Shown: positions 2,511-21,908 of the stretch, piece after piece | Position numbering within the stretch: the stretch's first letter is position 1 | Layout: each line of letters opens with the position of its first letter | Assembly: GCF_006345805.1 (NCBI RefSeq) | Contig: NW_021836685.1 | Coordinates: 1-23,019 of the forward strand | DNA length: 23,019 nt | Direction: 5' to 3' | From: Octopus sinensis | Taxonomy: Eukaryota | Position numbers and translations under genes: made by a program | The notes under the pieces: generated by a model | The model's input: the letters and a program-made list of their open reading frames with translations, nothing else | Told to the model about the DNA's origin: nothing | Database searches by the model: none

Positions 2511-2752
2511 TTATTCTTTCATTTGTTTCAGTCGTTTGACTGCGGCCACGCTGGAGCACCGCCTTTAGTCGAACAAATCGACTCCAAGACTTAGATTTTG
2601 TAAGCCTAGTACTTATTCTATCGATTTCATTTGTGGAACCGCTAAGTTACGGGGACGCAAACAAACCAACATCGGTTGTCAAGCGATGGTGTGGGGACAA
2701 ACACCCAGCATGGGCATAGTCAAATGAGTGAAACAAGTAAAAGAATAAAAGA

Positions 2753-2785
<33 letters not shown>

Positions 2786-2942
2786 GCTTATTTTAGTTTC
2801 CGTCTACCAAGTCCACTAACAAGGCTTTGGTTGGCTTGAGGCTATAGTAGAAGACACTCACCCAAGTTGTTACGCAGTGGGACAGAACCGGAACCATGTG
2901 GTTAGTAAACAAGCTACTTACCACATAGCCACTCCTGCGCCT
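2511..2942 (-). mobile_element. SINE group A, near full-length
   Basis: Head (ccacatagccactcctgcgcct, ends 2942) and tail (tgtttcagtcgtttgactgcggccacgctggagcaccgcctttagtcga) are reverse complements of 15298-15758; central (AT)n at 2754-2780; ttattctttcatt at 2511 and 2950 may be a target-site duplication. Confidence 0.9.
2705..2755 (+). mobile_element. SINE group A 3' tail fragment, opposite orientation, nested in the previous copy
   Basis: ccagcatgggcatagtcaaatgagtgaaacaagtaaaagaataaaagaata matches the group A tail at 15717-15758. Confidence 0.85.
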
Positions 2943-3590
2943 ACGACTATTATTCTTTCATTATTTCCCTTTCACGCTTACTTTGTTCATTCCACTCTTC
3001 GTTCTTTCCTTCCCTGTCTTTCACATTTCCTGGCCTTCTCTTCATGCTCACTTTCCCTCCTCTTTTCACTTCACTGAATCCCGTTCATTTTTTCTCGCCC
3101 CTCCTTAGTTCTTCTATCCCTCTACCTCCACTTCTCTCTCTCTTCTCTCCCCACGTTACCGGTGTTCGGCCAAGCCTGACCTTTCTTTCTTGGTTCGACT
3201 ACTATCCGTGCAACATCTATATTCCTCCCTGTACCTGAGAAATCTTATGTCCCAGCCGTAAGGCTTTACTTCCACACACGCCAGCTTAATTTAATTCGTC
3301 CTTAGTCGAAAGACACCTGTTGTTATGTCCTGTTATTTGCATTGTATTTGTGTAACATTCTCCGTTTTTTTCCCGTCCTTGTTTACGTATACACTCGAAC
3401 CTTCTTCCAAGGAATCTAGTACTCTTGGCTTAGTTTTTCCTTGGGGTTGGCCAGATTAGAGCAATATCGAGTATAACCAGCCGAAATTGTAAAGATAATC
3501 TAGAACTCGACTGAGGATAGAAAACTCAGAATGACTCGTCCTTGTTTTCTTTGTACTGTATGTTTGGATGTTTTGTTGTCCATTTTTTGT
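2943..3590 (+). mobile_element. Probable Penelope-like element pseudo-LTR remnant
   Basis: Long pyrimidine-rich tract followed by CpG-containing segments with decayed CTGANGA/GAAA motifs (cgactgaggatagaaaactcagaa near 3508-3531); shares the cgactgaRga...tccttg motif with 20540-20570 on the minus strand. Family assignment is pattern recognition only. Confidence 0.4.
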
Positions 3591-5788: not shown

Positions 5789-6190
5789 ATTCATATATAC
5801 AGTATAACTCTGGACTTCAAGATTGCGAAGAGAACGTCTTAACTGTTCGCACATGCTGCATCCAAATACATACGTACATATGTATATACAAAGATACGTA
5901 CATACATACAAACACACATACATACATACATACATACATACATACATACATACATAACATACATACCTACATACATACATACATACATTCATACTTACAT
6001 ACGTACATACATACGTACATGCATACATATATACATACATGCATACATATATATACGCTATATTCATACATGCATACATTTGTATATACACACATACAGT
6101 GCATGCATACATACATGCATATATACATACATACATACATACATACATACATACATACATACATACATACATAATACATACTTATACACA
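5701..6190. repeat. (CA)n plus compound (CATA)n microsatellite
   Basis: Direct reading: (CA)n about 5701-5783, (CATA)n mosaic about 5866-6190. Confidence 0.95.
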
Positions 6191-6196
6191 TGCATA

Positions 6197-6521
6197 GGAG
6201 CACTCCGTCGGTTGCGACGACGTGGGTCCCAACTAATACGATCAACGGAACAGCTGGCTCGTGAAATTCACGTGTTGGTGGCTGAGCACTCCACAAACAC
6301 GTGTACCCTTAACGTAGTTCTCGGGGAGATTCAGCGTGACACAGTGTGCGACAAGGCCGGCCCTTTGAAATACAAGTACTACTCATTTTTGCCAGCTGAG
6401 TGGACTGGAGCAACGTAAAATAAAGTGTCTTGCTCAAGGACAGAACGCGCTGCCGGGAATTGAACTCCTAACCTTACGATCATAAGCCGAATGCCCCTAA
6501 CCACTAAGCCACACGCCTTCA
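6197..6521 (-). mobile_element. SINE group C (tRNA head, CORE-like middle, shared tail), full-length
   Basis: Minus strand: A box tggcttagtgg, B box gagttcaattccc, CORE-like tccttgagcaagacactttattttacgttgctccagtccactcagctg, tail tgtcacgctgaatctccccgagaactacgttaagggtacacgtg...ccgacggagtgc. Resembles the octopus OR-type SINEs (from memory). Confidence 0.9.
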
Positions 6522-6797: not shown

Positions 6798-7241
6798 TTG
6801 ATTAATTTCCGTTTATTGGTCATAAATGATCCTGGGGTTTGTACAATGAAGAAACACGAGAGCAGTAGGAATTTTGTTCGAGTAATAAGGCGAATTCCAC
6901 AAAAACACTGGATTACAATGTCTGCAAGATAAGGTCTCCATTAGGAGAAAGAAAAAAATCTTTAAAAAGGTAAAATAAAGCACCTAGGTTAATTTGGGTC
7001 ATCCTTTGCAAAAACCTCTGGATTACTCTAAAGCACCAAAAAAAAAAAGTGCTTTTTCATAGTTTCTTGTAGTTTGTTTAGGGCCACTTTATCATAGTAG
7101 TCCCAATTAACCTGGTCGACGTTATCGCTATCACCCATATTTCGTAAAAACTGGAGGGCAGAGCATCACACGCCACTCTCGCCTTCTTCAATTAGTTGAA
7201 GAGGTTAGTGGAGGAGGGAAGAAACACTGTCCTTAAATATT

Positions 7242-7247
7242 TTTATT
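7242..7247 (-). promoter_or_regulatory. Candidate polyadenylation signal AATAAA
   Basis: AATAAA on the minus strand about 300 nt after the candidate stop codons, followed about 20 nt later by GU/U-rich gtgtttctt; the hexamer is common in AT-rich DNA. Confidence 0.3.
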
Positions 7248-7350
7248 GCCAACCAACCGTCTTCGCTATGGGCACCCATTAGAGTAAACTAACCGTTCTT
7301 TCTTGCCAAAGACGGTGGGTAGATCTTCAAGATAATCTGGACTATTATTT

Positions 7351-7515
7351 GAATCAATCCTGATGACGATGACAGTTATTATTATTATTATTATTATTGT
7401 TGTTGTTGTTGTTGTTTTGTTGTTGTTGTTGTTTTGTTGTTGTTTGTTGTTACGATGTTGATGAGATGTTATTGTTGTTGCTGTTGTTTTGATGATGATG
7501 ATGATGATGATGATG
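7351..7515. repeat. Compound (ATT)n/(GTT)n/(GAT)n microsatellite
   Basis: Direct reading. Confidence 0.9.
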
Positions 7516-7549
7516 GCGGCATGTTCAGTAACCAGCATCGAGATTGTTA

Positions 7550-7612
7550 TCAAGCGAATTTGGAGTAAACGAAACGAGCGATTTGACTTGAATTGGATAG
7601 CGCCATGAAAGC
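7550..7612 (-). CDS. Candidate terminal coding exon of an unidentified gene (AFMALSNSSQIARFVYSKFA*; alternative frame xLSWRYPIQVKSLVSFTPNSLDNNLDAGY* ending at 7525)
   Basis: Good acceptor ctccgtatttcttgcag|G at 7613/7612; an island of complex sequence between two microsatellite mosaics; both frames stay open when joined to 13891-13926. No protein recognised. Confidence 0.4.
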   Translation of the reverse strand, partial: AFMALSNSSQIARFVYSKFA

Positions 7613-7659
7613 CTGCAAGAAATACGGAGAACCCCCCACCCCCCACCCCTCACCCCGCT

Positions 7660-7990
7660 CCACGACGACGACGACGACCACCACCACCACCACCACTGCC
7701 GCCACCGCCGCCATCACCACCATCACAAGTACAACTACCAAGAACAACGTCACCACCACCACCACCACCATCATCACAAGAACAACCACCAAGGACAACG
7801 TCACCACAACCACCACTACCACCATCGCCATCATAGTTACTACGACTACTACAACTACTGCTACTGCTGCTGATAATGATGATAAGGATAGTGAATGATG
7901 ATACTGGTGATGATGATGATGATGATGACAACGTCGACGACGATAACGCTGATAATGACGACGACGACGACGACGATGACGATATGATGC
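7660..7990. repeat. Compound (CAC)n/(GAC)n/(ACT)n/(GAT)n trinucleotide mosaic
   Basis: Direct reading; source of the four overlapping low-complexity ORFs at 7550-8030. Confidence 0.9.
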
Positions 7991-8485
7991 CACCAGTACT
8001 ATAAGCTAAGCAATAAATTATTAAAGGCAATTTCCTTTTATTTTACTCAAACCAATATCCATTGCTACGTTTCGACCCGACCCTTCTAGCTCCTCCTCAT
8101 CCTTCTCTCCTCTTCCCCCCCTCTCTCTCTCCTATTCTTCATAAGACAGAATATTTGGTCCGTCCAGCTTTACTTTTACGCTTTTAATCTTCCATCTTCC
8201 TCGTCCATGTCACTTTATGAGATCGTTTGTTGCTGTTATTATCTGCCTGTCGAGCAAATGTATTCATATTTTATACACATCCCTATCATTTGCTTTATTT
8301 ACAAGTTACTTCAACATTCAAACAACCCATTACAATACTGTCCTCCATGCACGCACTCTGAAAATGCTCGATTCATATGAGTTTTTACGGCTTCCATAGA
8401 TAGACACACATCTCGTTTTCATTTCGAAGTTTTAGTTGGTTCATTTATGCTCAGCCGTAATTTAATTTATCTCTCTCCATCTGTC

Positions 8486-8505
8486 CGTTTGTCTGTCTGT
8501 CTGTG

Positions 8506-8576
<71 letters not shown>

Positions 8577-8612
8577 GACTGTCTGTCTGTCTGTCTGTCT
8601 GTCTGTCGTCTG

Positions 8613-8674
<62 letters not shown>

Positions 8675-8712
8675 GTCTGTTTATATGTCTATCAGTTCCT
8701 CTGTCTGTCAAT
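8486..8712. repeat. Compound (ATCT)n/(GTCT)n tetranucleotide repeat
   Basis: Direct reading. Confidence 0.95.
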
Positions 8713-8824
8713 CTGTCTGCCTGTCTCTGTGTCTCTTTCTCTATATCTCTACACGCATACATACACACAACGCGCAAACGCAAACACACATACACGCTTT
8801 CAACCAAAAGCACAACACACATAC

Positions 8825-8965
8825 ACCAACCAAATGGCTCCGGGTTCAGTCCCACTGCTTGACACCTTGGTGACGTGTCTTTTTCTACTATTGTCTTGGG
8901 CCGACCAAAGAAAGCCTTGTGAGTGGATTTGGTACACGGAAACTGAAAGAAGCAAGCCGTATATA

Positions 8966-9060
<95 letters not shown>

Positions 9061-9596
9061 AATGAAAGAATGGAGTCGAACGAAGATGTTAACAAAATTC
9101 CTTTACTCTCAACATATGTCGTTTACTCCAGATTCGCTTGAGAACAATCTCGATGAACATGCCGCCATCATCATCATCATCATCATCATCAAAACAACAG
9201 CAACAACAATAACATCTCATCAACATCGTAACAACAAACAACAACAACAATAACAACAACAATAATAATAATAATAATAATAATAACTGTCATCGTCATC
9301 AGGATTGATTCAAATAATAGTCCAGATTATCTTGAAGAGCTACCCACCGTCTTACTCTCGACATATGTCAAGAGTAAAGGAATTTTGTTAACATCTTCGT
9401 TCGACTCCATTCTTTCATTTATTCATATACAACACACAAATTTCTGCACATGAACCCGGAGTTTCTACCCTTGGACATGTCGCTTCAACCGTGTTTCTGA
9501 CGTGAATTTGCTACCCTGGTTCGGTTTTCGGTTCAACGAATTTTCCATGCTGACGATAAACATAGGATAATTCATTCACCTATTTATATATATATA

Positions 9597-9660
<64 letters not shown>

Positions 9661-9691
9661 GTGTGTGTGTGTGTTTGTGTATGTGTGTGTA

Positions 9692-9722
<31 letters not shown>

Positions 9723-9956
9723 TTGTGCGTTCGTGTGTGCGTGCGTGTGTGTGTGTGTGTGTGTCTTTTTGTCTCCCCACCATCGATTAACAATTGGTGT
9801 TGGTGTGTTTACGTCTCCGTAACCTAGAAGTTACTTAGATCGCTAGAATAAGTACTAAGTTTGCAAAGAATAAGTCCTGGGGTCGATTTCTTTGACTAAA
9901 GGCAGTGCTCCAGCATGGTCGCAGTCACATGACTGAAACAAATAAAAGAACAGAAT
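8825..9956 (+). mobile_element. SINE group A, split by an insertion in its central (AT)n
   Basis: Head half 8825-8960 (ccgggttcagtcccactgc...gccttgtgagtggatttggtacacggaaactgaaagaagc); tail half about 9760-9956 (taagtcctggggtcgatttc...cagcatggtcgcagtcacatgactgaaacaaataaaagaa). Confidence 0.85.
9058..9580. mobile_element. Palindromic PLE-like remnant carrying a captured inverted copy of 7309-7572
   Basis: 9058-9120 and 9360-9422 are inverted repeats (61/63 match); 9103-9120 and 9352-9369 are direct repeats (17/18); 9119-9353 is the reverse complement of 7309-7572; unique sequence continues to 9580 and is bounded by (AT)n. The structure is directly visible; the PLE identity is inferred. Confidence 0.7.
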
Positions 9957-10025
9957 ATATATACGTATGTGTTTGTGTGTCTGTGTTTGTCCCTCACCAT
10001 CGTTTAACAACCTCTGCGCTGCCCA

Positions 10026-10213
10026 TAGGTATTCCGTTTGTCTTTATGTTCTGAGTTCAAATTCCGCCGAAGTAAACTTAGCCTTTCATCCTTTCGGGAT
10101 CGATTAAATAAGTACCAGTTACGCACTGGGATCGCTGTAATCGACTTAATCCGTTTGTCTGTCCTTGTTTGTACCCTCTATGTTTAGCCCCTTGTGGGCA
10201 ATAAAGAATTAAG
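10026..10213 (+). mobile_element. SINE group B (Meta/MESC-like central domain), 5'-truncated, tail type 1
   Basis: gttctgagttcaaattccgccga...gcctttcatcctttcgggatcgattaaataagtaccagttacgcactggg...aatccgtttgtctgtccttgtttg; preceded by a short group A tail fragment at about 9966-10015. Confidence 0.85.
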
Positions 10214-10220
10214 CATCACT

Positions 10221-10368
10221 AGCCCGTCGGATAAAATGCTTAGCGCCATTGATTTTGTCTTTCATCTCTTCGAGCTCGATAAAATATGTATCCTTTGAAT
10301 ATTGGTGTCGATGTAATTGACTAACGACCTACATCGAAATTGCTGGCCTTGTGTCAAAATTTGAAGTC
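10221..10368 (+). mobile_element. SINE group B, old internally deleted copy, tail type 3
   Basis: aaaatgcttagcg...tctttcatctcttcgagctcgataaaata...gaaattgctggccttgtgtcaaaatttgaa, with the same tail as 21696-21908. Confidence 0.7.
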
Positions 10369-11234: not shown

Positions 11235-11269
<35 letters not shown>

Positions 11270-11351
11270 CCACCACCACCACCACCACCACCACCACCAC
11301 CACCACCACCATCACCATCACCACCACCATCACCATCACCATCACCATCAC

Positions 11352-11383
<32 letters not shown>

Positions 11384-11483
11384 CCACCACCACCACCACC
11401 ACCACCACCACCACCACCACCACCACCACCACCACCACCACCATCACCACCACCATCACCATCACCATCACCATCACCATCAT

Positions 11484-11538
<55 letters not shown>
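11093..11538. repeat. (ATCT)n-(GTCT)n-(CAT/CAC)n-(CAG)n compound microsatellite
   Basis: Direct reading; source of the poly-H, poly-P, poly-G and poly-V ORFs. Confidence 0.95.
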
Positions 11539-11539
<1 letters not shown>

Positions 11540-11742
11540 CGCCGGGTGAAATGCTTAGCGGTATTTCGTCTGCTGTTACGTTCTGAGTTCAAGTTCCGCC
11601 GATGTCGACTTTGTCTTTCATCCTTTCGAAGTCGATAAATTAAATACCAGTTACGCACTGGGGTCGATGTAATCGACTTAATCCGTTTGTCTGTCCTTGT
11701 TTGTTCCCTCTGTGTTTAGCCCTTGTGAGTAGTAAAGAAATA
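11536..11742 (+). mobile_element. SINE group B, tail type 1
   Basis: agcacgccgggtgaaatgcttagcggtatttcgtc...gttctgagttcaagttccgccg...tctttcatcctttcgaagtcgataaat...aatccgtttgtctgtcc. Confidence 0.9.
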
Positions 11743-11910
11743 GGTATTTCGTTTGCCGTTAGGTTTTGAGTTCGAATTCCGCCGAGGTCGACTTTGCCTT
11801 TCATCCTTTGGAGATCGATAAAATTAGTACCAGTTACGTACTGGGGTCGATGTAATCGGCTTAATCCCTTCCCCCCAAATTTGAGGCCTTGTGCTTCCAG
11901 TAGAAAGGAT
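11743..11910 (+). mobile_element. SINE group B, tail type 2, fused head-to-tail to the previous copy
   Basis: ggtatttcgtttgccgtt...gccgaggtcgactttgcctttcatcc...aaatttgaggccttgtgcttccagtagaaaggat followed by (TTC)n to 11995. Confidence 0.9.
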
Positions 11911-12006: not shown

Positions 12007-12202
12007 GGCAGAATCGTTAGCATGCCGGGCAATATGCTTCGCGGTATTTCGCCCGTTGCCACGTCCTGAGTTCAAATTCCGCCGAAGTTGACTTTGCCTT
12101 TCATCCTTTTGGGGTCAATAAATTAAGTACCAGTGAAACACTGGGGTCAATGTAATCGATTTATCCCCACAAATTTCAGGCCTTGTGCTTTTAGTAGAAA
12201 GG

Positions 12203-14089: not shown

Positions 14090-14275
14090 GTATTGGTAGT
14101 GGTAGTGAGGTGGTGGTGGTGGTGGTGGTGGTGGTGGTGGTGGCGGCGGTAGTGGTAACGGTTGTGAAAATTACGGTCATAATAAGGGGGTTCGGTGCGC
14201 TATTAGTTATGAAAATGATGATGATGATGGTGATGATGATGATGTTGATGATGTTGTTGATGATGGTGAGAATGA

Positions 14276-14307
<32 letters not shown>

Positions 14308-14396
14308 ATGGTGATGGTGATGATGACGATGATGATGAAGAAGAAGATGATGATGATGATGAGGGTCGTGGTGATGATGGTGGTGATGGTGATGAC

Positions 14397-14434
<38 letters not shown>

Positions 14435-14603
14435 GGAGGATGATGATGGAGGTGGTGGTGGTGGTGATGATGATGGTGGTGATGATGGTGATAGTGATAG
14501 TAATGATAACGATGTGATGATATTGACGATAACGACGACGATGATACTGATGATGATGTTGACGACGATAATGATAATGGTGATGGTACTGATGACGATG
14601 ATA

Positions 14604-14669
<66 letters not shown>

Positions 14670-14940
14670 GTGGTGGTAGTAGTACTAATACTGATAGTGC
14701 GTATGATGGCAGGGTTAGTGGAAGTAATGGTGTAATTGAGTGTGTTGGAAAGGATGGTTGAAACGATGATGATGTCTATGATGATGATGATGATGACAAT
14801 GTTGATGATGATGATGATGGTGACGACGACGATGTTGATGATGATGATGATGATGACGATTATGATGATGATGGCGACGACGACGACGGCGACAATGATG
14901 ATGGATGGATGGATGGTTAATGGTAATGGTGGAGGGTGAC
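14090..14940. repeat. About 850-bp (GAT)n/(GGT)n/(GAC)n trinucleotide mosaic
   Basis: Direct reading; source of the poly-M, poly-V and poly-H ORFs at 14017-15059. Confidence 0.95.
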
Positions 14941-15297: not shown

Positions 15298-15469
15298 AGA
15301 CGCAGGAGTGGCTGTGTGGTAAGTAGCTTGCTTACCAACCACATGGTTCTGGTTTCAGTCCCACTGCGTGGCACCTTGGGCAAGTATCTTCTACTATAGC
15401 CTCGAGCCGACTAAAGCCTTGTGAGTGGGTTTGGTAGACGGAAACTGAAAGAAGCTCGTCGTATATATG

Positions 15470-15532
<63 letters not shown>

Positions 15533-15758
15533 GTATGTGTGTGTGTGTATATGTTTGTGTGTCTGTTGTTTGTCACTCCAACATCGCTTGACGACCGATG
15601 CTGGTGTGTTTACGTCCCCGTAACTTACCGGTTTGGCAAAAGAGACCGATAGAATAAGTAGTAGGCTTACAAAGAATAAGGTCTGGGGTCGATTTGCTCG
15701 ACTAAAGGCGGTGCTCCAGCATGGCCGTAGTCAGATGACTGAGACAAGTAAAAGAGTA
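15298..15758 (+). mobile_element. SINE group A, full-length, best-preserved copy
   Basis: A box tggctgtgtgg, B-box-like ggtttcagtccc, gcaccttgggcaagtatcttctactatagcc, central (AT)n/(GTAT)n/(GT)n, tail ending gcggtgctccagcatggccgtagtcagatgactgagacaagtaaaagag. Confidence 0.92.
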
Positions 15759-16748: not shown

Positions 16749-17124
16749 GGGATCAATGACCCAGTGGTAAGAGCAGGGTACTCGCAGTTTGAGGATCACG
16801 GTTTCGATTCCCAGATGGGCGTTGTGAGTGTTTATTGAGCAAAAACACCTAAAGCTCCACGGGGCTCTGACAGGGCGTGGTGGTGAACCCTGCTGTACTC
16901 TTTCACCACAACTTTCTCTCACTCTTTTGTCCTGTTTCTGTTGTACCTGTATTTGAAAGGGCCAGCCTTGTCACACTCTGTGTCACGCTGAATCTCTCCG
17001 AGAACTACGTTAAGGGTACACGTGTCTGTGGAGTGCTCAGCCACTTACACGTTAATTTCTCGAGCAGGTTGTTCCGTTGATCGAATCAACTGGAACACTC
17101 GTCGTCGTAACCGACGGAGTGCCA
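16749..17124 (+). mobile_element. SINE group C variant (tRNA head, different middle, same tail as 6197-6521), inserted in (AT)n
   Basis: ccagtggtaagagc (A-box region), ggtttcgattccc (B box); 16943-17123 matches the reverse complement of 6199-6379; flanked by (AT)n at 16621-16748 and 17131-17150. Confidence 0.88.
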
Positions 17125-17130
17125 TCATTC

Positions 17131-17172
<42 letters not shown>

Positions 17173-18175
17173 ATAAATGTCTATTAATGTTTGTACAGTT
17201 ATAATAAAATCGATTTTACGTTAATCTGATGGGTTCATTAAACTTTTGCAGAGTACGCACCCATACACACGCGTGCATACACACACACGCACACACACAA
17301 AGACACAAAGATACATATACACACATAGACACATACACACATACATGCATACATACAAACACACAATACACATATGAAAGCGGATATTTGTGTTAGATAT
17401 GAGATATATACGTATTCGCTTTTCCGTAGTTGACGTGAAGAACTAACATTTAGGTTCTTACAGAATTGACATCCAGGTTACGTTTTGTCGTTCATTGTCT
17501 GCCAAGTTCTAGGTGGTGTTATTAGATGATGACAAACATTGTTAATATAACAGCATGATTAGAAATGTATTGGTTTCAAGTTTCTAAAGAACTAGACTAC
17601 CAAAGAACTCATCAACTCTAAAACTGGTGACCACATTGGTACTGAATTATACTTTCTTTGTATTCCATTGAAATATTTTCTTTTTTTCATTTCATTGATT
17701 TCTTTTCGAAATATTTAATTAAAACTGATGATGGAGTAATTAAAGCGAATGTGAAGTGATGAAATCAACTAAATTTTATTCAGACAATAGTATCCTGCAA
17801 CAAAACTTTAAACAGAGAACAAAAAAAGAAAAACTATGTAGATGCCAGCGGCAATTATAGGCTTCAGTTATTTAATCTGTTCCCAATCTGCAAAGACTAT
17901 GTCTATCCAATTAACATCACATCTAGTGATTCCGTCTTGAAACCAGCATCTATTGTTTATACTCATCAATTGCTGTCGCAGTCTGCATTTAAATAATCTT
18001 CATCTCCAGACGGTTGAAATCAAGTCACCAGCTACACACTGTGTCAACATAGTAAACATCTACACAGTATATTATTTTAACTAGATGTGATCTAAAACAT
18101 CTGTCTAATAATATCTAATCCATGCATTTGTCTATCAAGTCAGCATATTCTTAACTACACAAAGTTCACTACAGC

Positions 18176-18455: not shown

Positions 18456-18690
18456 GGTTAATCACCATGTCTTGGAACCGCCTCTGGAAGAACACCACTC
18501 ACAAGCAGTTCGAGCCAAATGAAGCCCATCAGCTATATAAAGCTTATCTAAGAGAAGATAACTCAATATTAATGCTGCGTCCTGATAACTACTGAGCTCG
18601 TGGTATATTGTTGCGCTGCTAGAGCAATAGAGGTTTGAAGGACAAGTGTGTGGGATTGACTTTGGACAAACCATGGCTATTATAATAATA

Positions 18691-19112
18691 GGATCTTTTC
18701 GGTTTGAACGGCAGTTTTTTCTAGCGGTGTCATATGAAATTGTCACCCATAATTATGACCCTAGTATCGATCTATTGCATTTCAATCTGTTTTAGGGTTA
18801 GGGTTAGGGGTGGGGGGATGGGTATCTTTTTTTTCTTCACAAATGTAAATAAACCCAATCTGTTTCTTAAACGAGGGACATATTCATACAGCACAGAATG
18901 TTTTTTTTTACCTCAATAGACGTCAGTGATTGGTTGAAATTGCAGAAATTGAAAAAAAAACAACAACAAATATCTTACAAACTATAGAATTTTCTCAATA
19001 AAGCCAAGAGAAAAAGATGTTTTATAAACACATTCTACCAGTATACGAAGTTGGAAATTTTTTAGTTACCTAGAAATTATGTTAAAAACTGCCGTTCAAA
19101 CCGAAAAGATCC
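18691..19112. mobile_element. MITE, 422 bp, perfect 29-bp TIRs, TA target duplication, internal TTAGGG repeats
   Basis: ggatcttttcggtttgaacggcagttttt (18691-18719) and aaaaactgccgttcaaaccgaaaagatcc (19084-19112); TA at 18689-18690 and 19113-19114. Confidence 0.92.
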
Positions 19113-19737
19113 TAATAATATTCAACCGGCAGATGGTTCAGTAAATCGTGACACCACCACCATTTCTTATTTTTTGAACTAACAGAAGTCTATAGCTATG
19201 TCCTGTTAAAAGCTCTATCGTCGGAACGACGAGAAAGTCCACCAGATTTTGTCATTCAGTCACCAACCTCTACATATTGGATATATCTAAGCGACACCTA
19301 AACACAATGTATTTAAACTGACGTGGCAAGGATACTTTATTGTCTTAATGTGCATGCTGTGTGTCTCCAGTTAACATGTGACATCTATCCATCCAGTCAA
19401 CGACTGTACAATGTACCAGCCAATACAGTCAACACACACAGAATGCATATCCTTCTAGTTATTATTTGCCCAATTCAGCGGCCAACGTTTAAACCCTATA
19501 TTTGTCTATCGAACCAACCATATTTACAGTATATTACAGTCTCAATGTATCGAATAAAAATATTCATATTGTGATTCTCAACTCAACAGTAAGTAAATGA
19601 ATGTTCCAAACACCAAAATATCCCCTTCTGTCAGAAGATATCCTTAATAGTTTCTGTTTCAATAATTCATTCGTGTTGCTATCCCAAAATAAAACACACA
19701 CACACACACACACAACACAAACATGCATATACATATG

Positions 19738-21695: not shown

Positions 21696-21908
21696 GGCAA
21701 CGAGCTGGTAGAATTGTTATTACGCCGAACAAAATGCTTAGCGGCATTTCGTGTGTCTTCACGTTCCGAGTTCAAATTCTCCCGAGATCGACTTTGCCTT
21801 TCATCCTTTCGGGGTCGGCAAAATAAGTACCAGTTGAACACTGGGATCGATGTAATCAACTCACCCCACTCTACCGAAATTGCTGGCCTTGTGCCAAACT
21901 GTAAAACC
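21696..21908 (+). mobile_element. SINE group B, full-length, tail type 3, with 20-bp target-site duplication
   Basis: ggcaacgagctggtagaattgtta...aaaatgcttagcggcatttcg...gagttcaaattc...gcctttcatcctttcggggtcggcaaaataagtaccag; flanked by aatatgaccaactgtgataa (21676-21695) and aatatgatcaactgtgataa (21909-21928). Confidence 0.93.

What the first reader, a model, noticed from the sequence alone, without database searches (positions are those of the whole stretch)
9058..9422. Palindromic PLE-like cassette that captured a nearby host exon/UTR segment at its symmetry axis
Seen: the arms 9058-9120 and 9360-9422 are 61/63 inverted. Removing the insert and one copy of the 18-bp direct repeat ttactctcRacatatgtc restores one near-perfect palindrome of about 116 bp centred on acatatgt. 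The 231-bp insert is an inverted copy of unique local DNA (7309-7572), with 2-nt junction microhomologies (tc, tt); the source also has tttactct about 25 nt beyond the right junction, matching the arm. The arms look like TIRs but there are no transposase-type ends; the duplication is inside, around the cargo. Known: PLEs form inverted pseudo-LTR structures and can mobilise host sequence. Inference: a hairpin-primed capture route (PLE reverse transcriptase template switch, or microhomology-templated repair of a cut cruciform) that packages host sequence between self-complementary arms.
Basis: partly seen in the sequence, partly recalled or inferred. Interest (0 to 1): 0.85.

Follow-up and report, generated by a model that had tools for sequence, protein, structure and literature searches.

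The report
Palindrome split by copied nearby DNA
A 116-bp DNA palindrome in a repeat-rich animal genome was split at its centre by an inverted copy of a 264-bp stretch lying 1.55 kb away; the junctions look like ordinary error-prone DNA repair or replication template switching, not a new mobile-element capture system.

Summary
The arms 9058-9115 and 9365-9422 are inverted copies. An 18-bp direct repeat (9103-9120 and 9352-9369) brackets a 231-bp insert (9121-9351). That insert is the reverse complement of 7309-7572, with 2-nt overlaps at both junctions. Removing the insert and one repeat copy restores a spacerless 116-bp palindrome.

The window holds no reverse transcriptase, GIY-YIG endonuclease, transposase or hammerhead ribozyme. 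The arm occurs nowhere else in the window. Nothing shows that the source is an exon or UTR.

The template is close by, inverted, and joined with microhomology at both ends. Copying also resumed 18 nt behind the point where it left. This is the published signature of microhomology-mediated templated insertion (FoSTeS/MMBIR, or "gap filling" as in single-copy Pack-TIRs), here at a break- or stall-prone palindrome centre.

New context: the palindrome, its cargo and 158 nt of unique DNA form a 520-bp block. This block interrupts the (TA)n microsatellite inside a SINE-like repeat. The palindrome itself could therefore derive from a mobile element.

I could not run genome-wide copy counts or search for an empty allele, because no eukaryotic genome collection was available. 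Best filed as a new member of a known kind, of low to moderate interest.

The parts
9058..9115 (+). Left arm of the palindrome (58 nt), ending at the symmetry centre ACAT|ATGT
9103..9120 (+). Direct repeat copy 1 (TTACTCTCAACATATGTC): the last 13 nt of the left arm plus 5 nt past the centre. Its last 2 nt (TC) overlap the copied segment
   Evidence: (D11)
9121..9351 (-). Cargo: a 231-bp reverse-complement copy of 7309-7572. It is shorter than the source because of a 19-nt microsatellite difference and a 10-nt indel
   Evidence: (I1, I2)
9352..9369 (+). Direct repeat copy 2 (TTACTCTCGACATATGTC). Its first 2 nt (TT) overlap the copied segment
   Evidence: (D11)
9365..9422 (+). Right arm of the palindrome (58 nt)
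7309..7572 (+). Source (template) segment, 1.55 kb upstream. It contains (TTA)n, (TTG)n and (TGA)n runs
7282..7289 (+). AGAGTAAA, an 8-mer shared with the palindrome core, 19 nt outside the source's left end. It was not used as a junction
7563..7569 (+). GAGTAAA, a 7-mer shared with the palindrome core, just inside the source's right end next to the CGA priming site
9423..9580 (+). 158 nt with no other copy in the window. Together with the palindrome it forms the 520-bp block 9061-9580 that interrupts a microsatellite
8960..9060 (.). (TA)n tract abutting the left arm: the left half of the interrupted internal microsatellite of the SINE-like repeat
9581..9764 (.). (TA)n(TATG)n(TG)n: the right half of the interrupted microsatellite
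8825..8958 (+). Part A of the composite SINE-like repeat. Part B is about 9765-9949. Uninterrupted relatives lie at 15334-15755 and at 2511-2958 on the minus strand

Best explanation
A spacerless (or nearly spacerless) 116-bp palindrome already existed at this site. Such sequences fold into hairpins or cruciforms, which stall replication forks and get cut.

At or just past the symmetry centre, a growing or broken 3' DNA end (...ACATATGTC[G]) left its template. It annealed by 2-3 nt (TC, or TCG) to the opposite strand of a segment 1.55 kb away, at 7570-7572. It then copied about 264 nt back to 7309.

It returned by a 2-nt overlap (TT) to the palindrome, 18 nt behind the point where it had left. 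This re-copied TTACTCTCGACATATGTC and left the cargo bracketed by an 18-bp direct repeat.

In four-point template-switch notation: L to point 1 = 9120; point 2 to point 3 = 7572 to 7309; point 4 = the position equivalent to 9103. Point 4 precedes point 1.

The process is DNA-templated and microhomology-mediated. It could be a replication-fork template switch (FoSTeS/MMBIR). It could equally be gap filling of a centre break, where off-centre opening of the two hairpin-capped ends would also give the 18-bp duplication.

The result has no evident function. It converts an unstable palindrome into an inverted repeat with a 249-bp spacer, which should be more stable.

Shown: the structure, the junctions, the direction (9121-9351 is the copy) and the absence of RT/EN coding remnants. 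Inferred: the initiating lesion, and which polymerase or pathway acted.
For: 1. Removing the insert and one repeat copy restores a 116-bp palindrome. So 9121-9351 is the insertion and 7309-7572 is the donor. No comparable repeat brackets 7309-7572.

2. The donor lies in cis, 1.55 kb away, in inverted orientation, with microhomology at both junctions. This is the published MMBIR templated-insertion signature: an insertion near to and inverted relative to its template, flanked by microhomologies (PMC8421209). It also matches single-copy Pack-TIR gap filling, which shows a cis bias mostly under 5 kb, a median 2-bp microhomology, and breakpoints skewed to the middle of inverted-repeat elements (PMC8277862).

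3. Microhomology of at least 2 nt at both junctions is expected in only about 2.4% of random blunt joins.

4. Events in which the return point precedes the departure point are a documented class of template switch (PMC7954356).

5. Unspaced inverted repeats are cut and stall forks, while spacers suppress this (PMC3300023).

6. A 7-mer from the palindrome core (GAGTAAA) lies at both ends of the donor. The empirical P is about 0.002 for random 264-nt segments of this window. This suggests that short homology helped template choice.

7. The copies have diverged: the insert differs from the source at five aligned substitution positions, and the arm and repeat differences sit at CpG-type positions. 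The structure therefore arose in vivo and is not brand new.

8. No RT, endonuclease, transposase or hammerhead ribozyme was found anywhere in the window.
Against: - No empty allele or orthologue could be examined, so the pre-existing palindrome is a reconstruction.
- The template distance (1.55 kb) and insert length (231 bp) exceed those of the short-range events catalogued in the cited surveys, which looked within about 100 bp.
- Two-nucleotide overlaps are weak evidence taken one at a time.
- The GAGTAAA test was post hoc.
- The structure alone cannot separate a fork template switch from break repair.
- It also cannot formally exclude copying of a local transcript by a reverse transcriptase.
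Confidence: 0.68

Rival explanations
1. One complex multi-switch event built both the palindrome and the insertion. The ancestor would have had a single arm with only a short central palindrome. A chain of template switches then went to the donor, back 18 nt upstream, folded back onto the opposite strand to copy the arm, and finally returned to the flank. This would create the second arm and the cargo together.
For: - Iterative template switches and fold-back copying do generate perfect inverted repeats (PMC7954356; PMC11293582, listed).
- Arm divergence (2 of 63, both in one CpG-type dinucleotide) is no greater than cargo-to-source divergence. The arms therefore need not be older than the insertion.
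Against: - It needs four switches rather than two.
- Both repeat copies contain the centre (13 + 5 nt), so a central palindrome must have pre-existed anyway.
- Removing the insert leaves a symmetrical 116-bp palindrome, which is explained most simply if it was there first.
Confidence: 0.1
2. Reverse-transcriptase route. During insertion of a PLE or other retroelement into the (TA)n tract, the RT switched from element RNA to a local transcript and back, or the cDNA self-primed as a hairpin. This would place host sequence between self-complementary element ends.
For: - The 520-bp block 9061-9580 interrupts a (TA)n microsatellite inside a SINE-like repeat.
- Naiad PLEs prefer (TA)n, form inverted-repeat insertions, lack hammerheads, and are recorded in Octopus species (PMC8557442).
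- PLEs can retrotranspose host genes in trans.
- RT template jumps also use microhomology (established knowledge).
Against: - No RT, GIY-YIG or hammerhead remnant was found in the whole window.
- The arm is single-copy in the window.
- The left copy (58 nt) lacks the outer 158 nt that a 5'-truncated inverted PLE copy should keep (compared).
- Cephalopod Naiads are described as ancient remnants, yet these arms are nearly identical.
- A donor only 1.55 kb away is expected for DNA-templated repair but is only incidental for an RNA-mediated route.
- The cargo has no poly(A) tail and offers no test of intron loss.
Confidence: 0.07
3. Ordinary mobile element: the arms are terminal inverted repeats of a MITE or DNA transposon, 9121-9351 is its normal interior, and 7309-7572 is another partial copy of that repeat.
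For: - Near-perfect inverted termini.
- A TA dinucleotide can be read on both sides of AATGAAAG...CTTTCATT.
- Palindromic MITEs are known, for example MADE1 (from my own knowledge, not tested here).
Against: - The 18-bp duplication lies inside the structure, around the cargo, not outside the arms.
- Removing the cargo restores a perfect palindrome.
- 7309-7572 has no arms, and its ends differ from the cargo's context.
- The pair is by far the most similar repeat pair in the window: about 98% over aligned columns (87% in BLAST with its gaps counted), against 69-87% for nearly all other repeat pairs.
- No other copy exists in 23 kb, although this is weak because the window is small.
Confidence: 0.05
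4. Target-primed retrocopy: a LINE-type endonuclease and RT inserted a cDNA of a local transcript, producing an 18-bp target-site duplication.
For: The 18-bp flanking duplication falls within the usual range for LINE target-site duplications (established knowledge).
Against: - There is no A-rich or microsatellite tail at either end of the cargo.
- The donor lies 1.55 kb away on the same molecule.
- Both junctions carry microhomology.
- The target is the exact centre of a palindrome.
Confidence: 0.05
5. Assembly or library artefact: a chimeric read or an amplification-induced template switch.
For: - Palindromes and microsatellite-rich regions are hard to assemble.
- In-vitro strand-displacement amplification produces inverted chimeras with microhomology (established knowledge).
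Against: - The two copies differ by substitutions and indels.
- The arm and repeat differences are confined to CpG-type positions.
- An artefact made from one molecule should be identical to its template.
Confidence: 0.03

Closest known systems
Microhomology-mediated templated insertion (FoSTeS / MMBIR; the four-point template-switch model)
   Same: The insertion is an inverted copy of a nearby template. Both junctions carry microhomology. It starts at a structure-forming sequence, and the return point lies behind the departure point, which gives a small flanking duplication (PMC8421209, PMC2621351, PMC7954356).
   Different: The catalogued short-range events use templates within about 100 bp and produce inserts of tens of bases. 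Here the template is 1.55 kb away and the insert is 231 bp. This is a fixed germline event in a non-model animal, and the pathway itself was not observed.
Single-copy Pack-TIRs formed by transposition-independent gap filling (Tan et al. 2021, PMC8277862)
   Same: Host sequence sits between two inverted-repeat arms. The parental copy is in cis, under 5 kb away. Microhomology is about 2 bp. The breakpoints lie in the middle of the inverted-repeat unit.
   Different: Pack-TIRs are defined by flanking sequence from a recognised TIR transposon. The arms here could not be assigned to any transposon family. The breakpoints also give an 18-bp duplication rather than the small deletion typical of that set.
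Palindrome instability and stabilising centre rearrangements (cruciform or hairpin cleavage; spacer effect)
   Same: The rearrangement lies exactly at the symmetry centre and turns a spacerless palindrome into a widely spaced inverted repeat. Spacers reduce cruciform cutting and fork stalling (PMC3300023).
   Different: The classic outcomes are small central deletions or translocations. Here the outcome is a templated 249-bp addition.
Penelope-like element insertions (pseudo-LTRs, inverted 5'-truncated copies, (TA)n targeting in Naiads)
   Same: An inverted-repeat structure sits inside a (TA)n microsatellite, and PLEs are known to carry host sequence (PMC8557442).
   Different: There is no RT/EN coding sequence or hammerhead ribozyme. 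The arms are 58 nt and unequal in extent (58 against 216 nt to the microsatellite). The inverted copy lacks the 3' end. The cargo lies at the symmetry axis with an internal duplication, and its donor is 1.55 kb away.

Membership tests
Penelope-like element (PLE) | ORF with a PLE-type reverse transcriptase | tested here: not met
   Pfam scan of 205 stop-free six-frame segments of at least 40 aa across the whole window found no RVT family. The only hits were six unrelated families at E = 0.005-0.008.
Penelope-like element (PLE) | GIY-YIG endonuclease domain | tested here: not met
   The same scans gave no GIY-YIG hit.
Penelope-like element (PLE) | Hammerhead ribozyme in the pseudo-LTR (canonical clades; absent in Naiads) | tested here: not met
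   The Rfam gathering search of the window returned 0 matches. The permissive search of 7000-10000 found no hammerhead at E <= 1.
Penelope-like element (PLE) | Repeats formed from the element's own body: a partial tandem (pLTR) and/or an inverted 5'-truncated copy that keeps its 3' end | tested here: not met
   The left copy is 58 nt and ends at the (TA)n tract. The right copy runs on for a further 158 nt (9423-9580) that the left copy lacks. No tandem partial copy is present.
Penelope-like element (PLE) | Arms match a PLE family consensus of the host genome; multi-copy | not testable with these tools
   No eukaryotic genome or repeat library was available. The arm is absent from the rest of the window and from the metagenome, prokaryote and viral collections.
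Penelope-like element (PLE) | Insertion bias for microsatellites ((TA)n for Naiads) | tested here: inconclusive
   The block 9061-9580 does sit inside a (TA)n tract. However, 21% of the window is tandem repeat, so adjacency alone is weak evidence.
MMBIR / FoSTeS templated insertion | Inserted sequence has a template nearby on the same molecule | tested here: met
   7309-7572 against 9119-9353, E = 2e-94. The template lies 1.55 kb away.
MMBIR / FoSTeS templated insertion | Insert is inverted relative to its template | tested here: met
   Inverted pairs I1 and I2; alignment.
MMBIR / FoSTeS templated insertion | Microhomology at both junctions | tested here: met
   TC (or TCG if the ancestor had CpG at that position) and TT. 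P is about 0.024 for at least 2 nt at both junctions by chance.
MMBIR / FoSTeS templated insertion | Arises during replication or break-induced synthesis (pathway dependence on Pol delta/Pol32, Pol theta and the like) | not testable with these tools
   This needs genetics or an experimental system.
Pack-TIR (single-copy, gap filling) | Flanks are the two halves of a recognised TIR transposon | not testable with these tools
   No repeat library was available. A TA flank is possible but trivial inside (TA)n. The ends of block 9061-9580 show no convincing TIR.
Pack-TIR (single-copy, gap filling) | Parental copy present, in cis, with microhomology and breakpoints internal to the unit | tested here: met
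   compared with the criteria in PMC8277862.
LINE-type retrocopy (target-primed reverse transcription) | Flanking target-site duplication | tested here: met
   An 18-bp direct repeat is present.
LINE-type retrocopy (target-primed reverse transcription) | 3' poly(A) or simple-repeat tail at one end of the insert | tested here: not met
   The insert ends read GTTTACTCC... and ...CCCACCGTC. The simple repeats are internal.
MITE | Terminal inverted repeats, an external target-site duplication, and many copies | tested here: inconclusive
   Inverted termini are present. The external duplication cannot be read inside (TA)n. Copy number cannot be tested beyond this window, where there is one copy.

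The most novel reading that the evidence does not exclude
The palindrome belongs to a genome-wide family of self-complementary cassettes, possibly fold-back ends of a PLE or other retroelement that targets (TA)n. These cassettes would repeatedly acquire nearby host sequence at their symmetry axis. That would make them a previously undescribed hairpin-centred sequence-capture route in cephalopod-like genomes, rather than a one-off repair scar.
Probability: 0.05. Interest if true: 0.7.

Novelty: new member of a known kind. Interest (0 to 1): 0.22.

Why it matters
This is a clean natural example, resolved to the base, of how a perfect palindrome is disarmed in a germline. A templated insertion at the exact centre leaves both junctions, the donor and the flanking duplication still legible.

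Such cases help calibrate how far (kilobase scale) and how long (hundreds of bases) microhomology-mediated template switches reach outside model organisms. They also show how inverted-repeat units come to carry host DNA, in the manner of Pack-TIRs.

It does not reveal a new mechanism or a new element.

Tried and rejected
- **Arm in public collections.** Exact 25-30-mers of the arm gave 0 hits in the metagenome (two scans), prokaryotic genome and viral collections. A 32-mer of the source gave 0 hits in the viral collection. These collections hold essentially no animal genomes, so the result says nothing about copy number in the host.
- **Alleles or orthologues through exact-protein look-ups.** Four window ORFs were tried, one spanning the left junction and three in or next to the source. 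None is on record.
- **Protein homology searches.** The source ORF, a hypothetical ORF across the empty palindrome, and the SINE-plus-arm ORF gave nothing beyond low-complexity matches.
- **Organism identification.** A full-text search of papers for the SINE-like sequence gave one irrelevant hit. From memory the two SINE-like families look like octopus repeats; this remains untested.
- **Terminal inverted repeats at the ends of block 9061-9580.** Only a weak, gapped TATAAAT...TGAA[A/T]GAAT similarity was found, which is not convincing.
- **GAGTAAA direct repeats at 7282-7290 and 7561-7569 as a target-site duplication.** I considered whether they mark a mobile unit. Rejected, because the copied segment (7309-7572) has different boundaries.
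- **A perfect ancestral palindrome with two later CpG-to-CpA changes.** This is attractive. However, an ancestor with a CA/CA mismatch plus one later A-to-G change explains the data about equally well, so I leave it open.
- **One remaining representative-protein search.** I ran no further search on the 36-40-aa stop-free stretches of 9365-9580. A null result would have been uninformative.

Full report
**1. What is there**

The window is eukaryotic, about 36% G+C on average. 21% of it is tandem repeat, and it carries several diverged SINE-like repeats. It has no tRNA gene, no Rfam family at gathering score and no credible protein-coding ORF.

At the reported place the description holds.
- 9058-9120 and 9360-9422 are inverted copies, 61/63. 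The pair extends to 9053-9121 / 9359-9427 at 94%.
- An 18-bp direct repeat, TTACTCTC[A/G]ACATATGTC, lies at 9103-9120 and 9352-9369.
- The 231 bp between the repeats (9121-9351) are the reverse complement of 7309-7572 (E = 2e-94).
- The two copies differ by three substitutions outside the microsatellite and two inside it. They also differ by a 19-nt microsatellite length difference and a 10-nt indel (AGTAACCAGC), whose extra bases are present only in the source and flanked by CA.
- The junctions share TC (9119-9120) and TT (9352-9353) with the donor.
- Joining 9120 to 9370 gives a spacerless palindrome with 58-nt arms. It is mismatched only at offsets 5-6 from the centre ACAT|ATGT.
- The region folds far better than shuffled sequence: z = -15.7, and 0 of 100 shuffles fold as well.

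**2. Direction and order of events**

Removing 9121-9351 plus one repeat copy restores a palindrome, and nothing comparable brackets 7309-7572. So 9121-9351 is the copy and 7309-7572 is the donor.

Both repeat copies contain the symmetry centre (13 nt to its left, 5 nt to its right). At least the central palindrome therefore existed before the insertion. The simplest reading is that the whole 116-bp palindrome did.

All arm and repeat differences fall in two CpG-type dinucleotides.
- Restoring CG at both positions gives a perfect palindrome. On that reading two CpG-to-CpA changes followed the event, and the first junction overlap would be TCG.
- An ancestor with a CA/CA mismatch plus one later A-to-G change fits about equally well. 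I leave this open.

Either way the copies have diverged in vivo. That argues against an assembly or amplification artefact.

**3.

A composite SINE-like repeat consists of part A, an internal (TA)n(TATG)n(TG)n microsatellite and part B. It occurs uninterrupted at 15334-15755 and, inverted, at 2511-2958.

A third copy spans 8825-9949. Its microsatellite is interrupted by a 520-bp block, 9061-9580. The block consists of the palindrome with its cargo plus 158 nt (9423-9580) that have no other copy in the window. Its two ends show no convincing terminal inverted repeat.

The palindrome is therefore not old host sequence. It arrived or formed inside a (TA)n tract after the SINE-like repeat was in place. 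The SINE-like copies are 69-87% alike, whereas the cargo-donor pair is about 98% alike outside its indels. The capture is thus the youngest event in the neighbourhood.

**4. Mechanism**

The donor is 1.55 kb away on the same molecule and is copied in inverted orientation. Both junctions have short microhomology. Copying resumed 18 nt behind the point of departure.

In the four-point template-switch model the order is 3-2-4-1, with point 4 preceding point 1. That class is documented and is interpreted as strand invasion or D-loop-like (PMC7954356).

The same features define transposition-independent gap filling in single-copy Pack-TIRs of animals. Those show a cis bias (mostly under 5 kb), a median 2-bp microhomology, and breakpoints skewed towards the middle of inverted-repeat elements, attributed to internal fragile sites (PMC8277862).

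Unspaced inverted repeats extrude cruciforms, are cut, and stall forks, and spacers suppress this (PMC3300023). This explains why the event sits at the centre and why the product persists.

Two sub-models fit equally well.
- (a) A nascent strand passes the centre, dissociates, copies the lagging-strand template behind the fork, and returns 18 nt upstream.
- (b) The cruciform or hairpin is cut, and the two hairpin-capped ends are opened 5-6 and 13 nt off the apex. In a palindrome this yields exactly the observed duplication. Each 3' end then primes on the donor by microhomology, and the two new strands anneal.

By chance, at least 2 nt of overlap at both junctions is expected in about 2.4% of blunt joins.

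A 7-mer of the palindrome core (GAGTAAA) occurs at both ends of the donor: 7283-7289 just outside one end, and 7563-7569 beside the CGA priming site at the other. Only 0.17% of random 264-nt segments of this window have such a match at both ends. The test was post hoc and the motif was not used as a junction. It does suggest that short homology helped bring donor and break together.

**5. The PLE/RT interpretation**

From PMC8557442, PLEs are defined by:
- an RT plus a GIY-YIG endonuclease ORF;
- pseudo-LTRs made of partial tandem copies;
- often an adjacent inverted 5'-truncated copy;
- a 30-40-bp tail;
- hammerhead ribozymes in canonical clades;
- a microsatellite insertion bias, (TA)n for Naiads. 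Naiads occur in Octopus species only as ancient remnants.

Here none of 205 stop-free six-frame segments across the entire window matches an RT, GIY-YIG or transposase family. There is no hammerhead. The inverted copy is 58 nt and lacks the outer 158 nt that a 5'-truncated copy would retain.

The only PLE-compatible feature is the location in (TA)n, which is weak in a window that is one-fifth tandem repeat. A retroelement origin of the block, for instance a 216-nt 5'-truncated insertion with a 58-nt fold-back, cannot be excluded without a host repeat library.

The capture of a donor 1.55 kb away is what DNA-templated repair predicts. An RNA-mediated route would produce it only incidentally.

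The claim that the donor is an exon or UTR has no support. It has no homologue and lies within triplet microsatellites.

**6. What could not be done**

No eukaryotic genome collection was available. The following all returned nothing:
- searches with the arm and donor in the metagenome, prokaryote and viral collections;
- exact-protein look-ups;
- protein homology searches.

They are the decisive next steps.

**7. Verdict**

The most likely explanation is a microhomology-mediated, DNA-templated insertion at the centre of a palindrome (confidence about 0.68). The finding is a new member of a known kind, of low to moderate interest (0.22).

The most novel reading still open is a family of palindromic cassettes that repeatedly capture local DNA. 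I give it about 5%.

Noticed in passing
window 8825-9949, compared with 15334-15755 and 2511-2958 (minus strand): A composite SINE-like repeat (part A, an internal (TA)n(TATG)n(TG)n microsatellite, part B) occurs three times. The copy at 8825-9949 has its microsatellite interrupted by the 520-bp block 9061-9580, which contains the palindrome. From memory both halves resemble octopus SINEs; this was not tested.
   Followed up: partly
window 18682-18719 and 19084-19121: A second inverted-repeat structure: 38-nt arms at 95% identity with a 364-nt interior. The interior contains a telomere-like run, TTAGGGTTAGGGTTAGGGG, near 18793-18812. There is no other copy in the window. It may be a MITE-like element.
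   Followed up: no
window 7282-7290 and 7561-7569: [A/G]GAGTAAAC occurs as an 8/9 direct repeat bracketing most of the donor segment. It shares GAGTAAA with the palindrome core. The empirical P is about 0.002 for such a match at both ends of a random segment.
   Followed up: partly
window 7527-7536 (source), compared with 9154-9155 (copy): A 10-nt indel (AGTAACCAGC), whose extra bases are present only in the source, is flanked by CA on both sides. It could be a slippage error made during the copying event or a later change.
   Followed up: no
window 10025-10320, 11536-11690, 11740-11895, 12007-12190, 21707-21898: A second SINE-like family (...GTTCTGAGTTCAA.TTCCGCCGA.GTCGACTTTGCCTTTCATCC...) has five copies at 75-87% identity. 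They include a tandem pair at 11560-11687 and 11743-11870.
   Followed up: no
window 7677-7990, 11238-11539, 14215-14886: Very long triplet-repeat arrays: CAC/CATCAC/CAG, ATG/GAT up to 670 bp, and ACC/GAT. They create long spurious ORFs rich in His, Asp, Ser and Met.
   Followed up: no
window 6128-6382 and 16940-17195: An inverted pair of 257 bp at 82% identity, 10.5 kb apart. It represents another dispersed repeat family.
   Followed up: no
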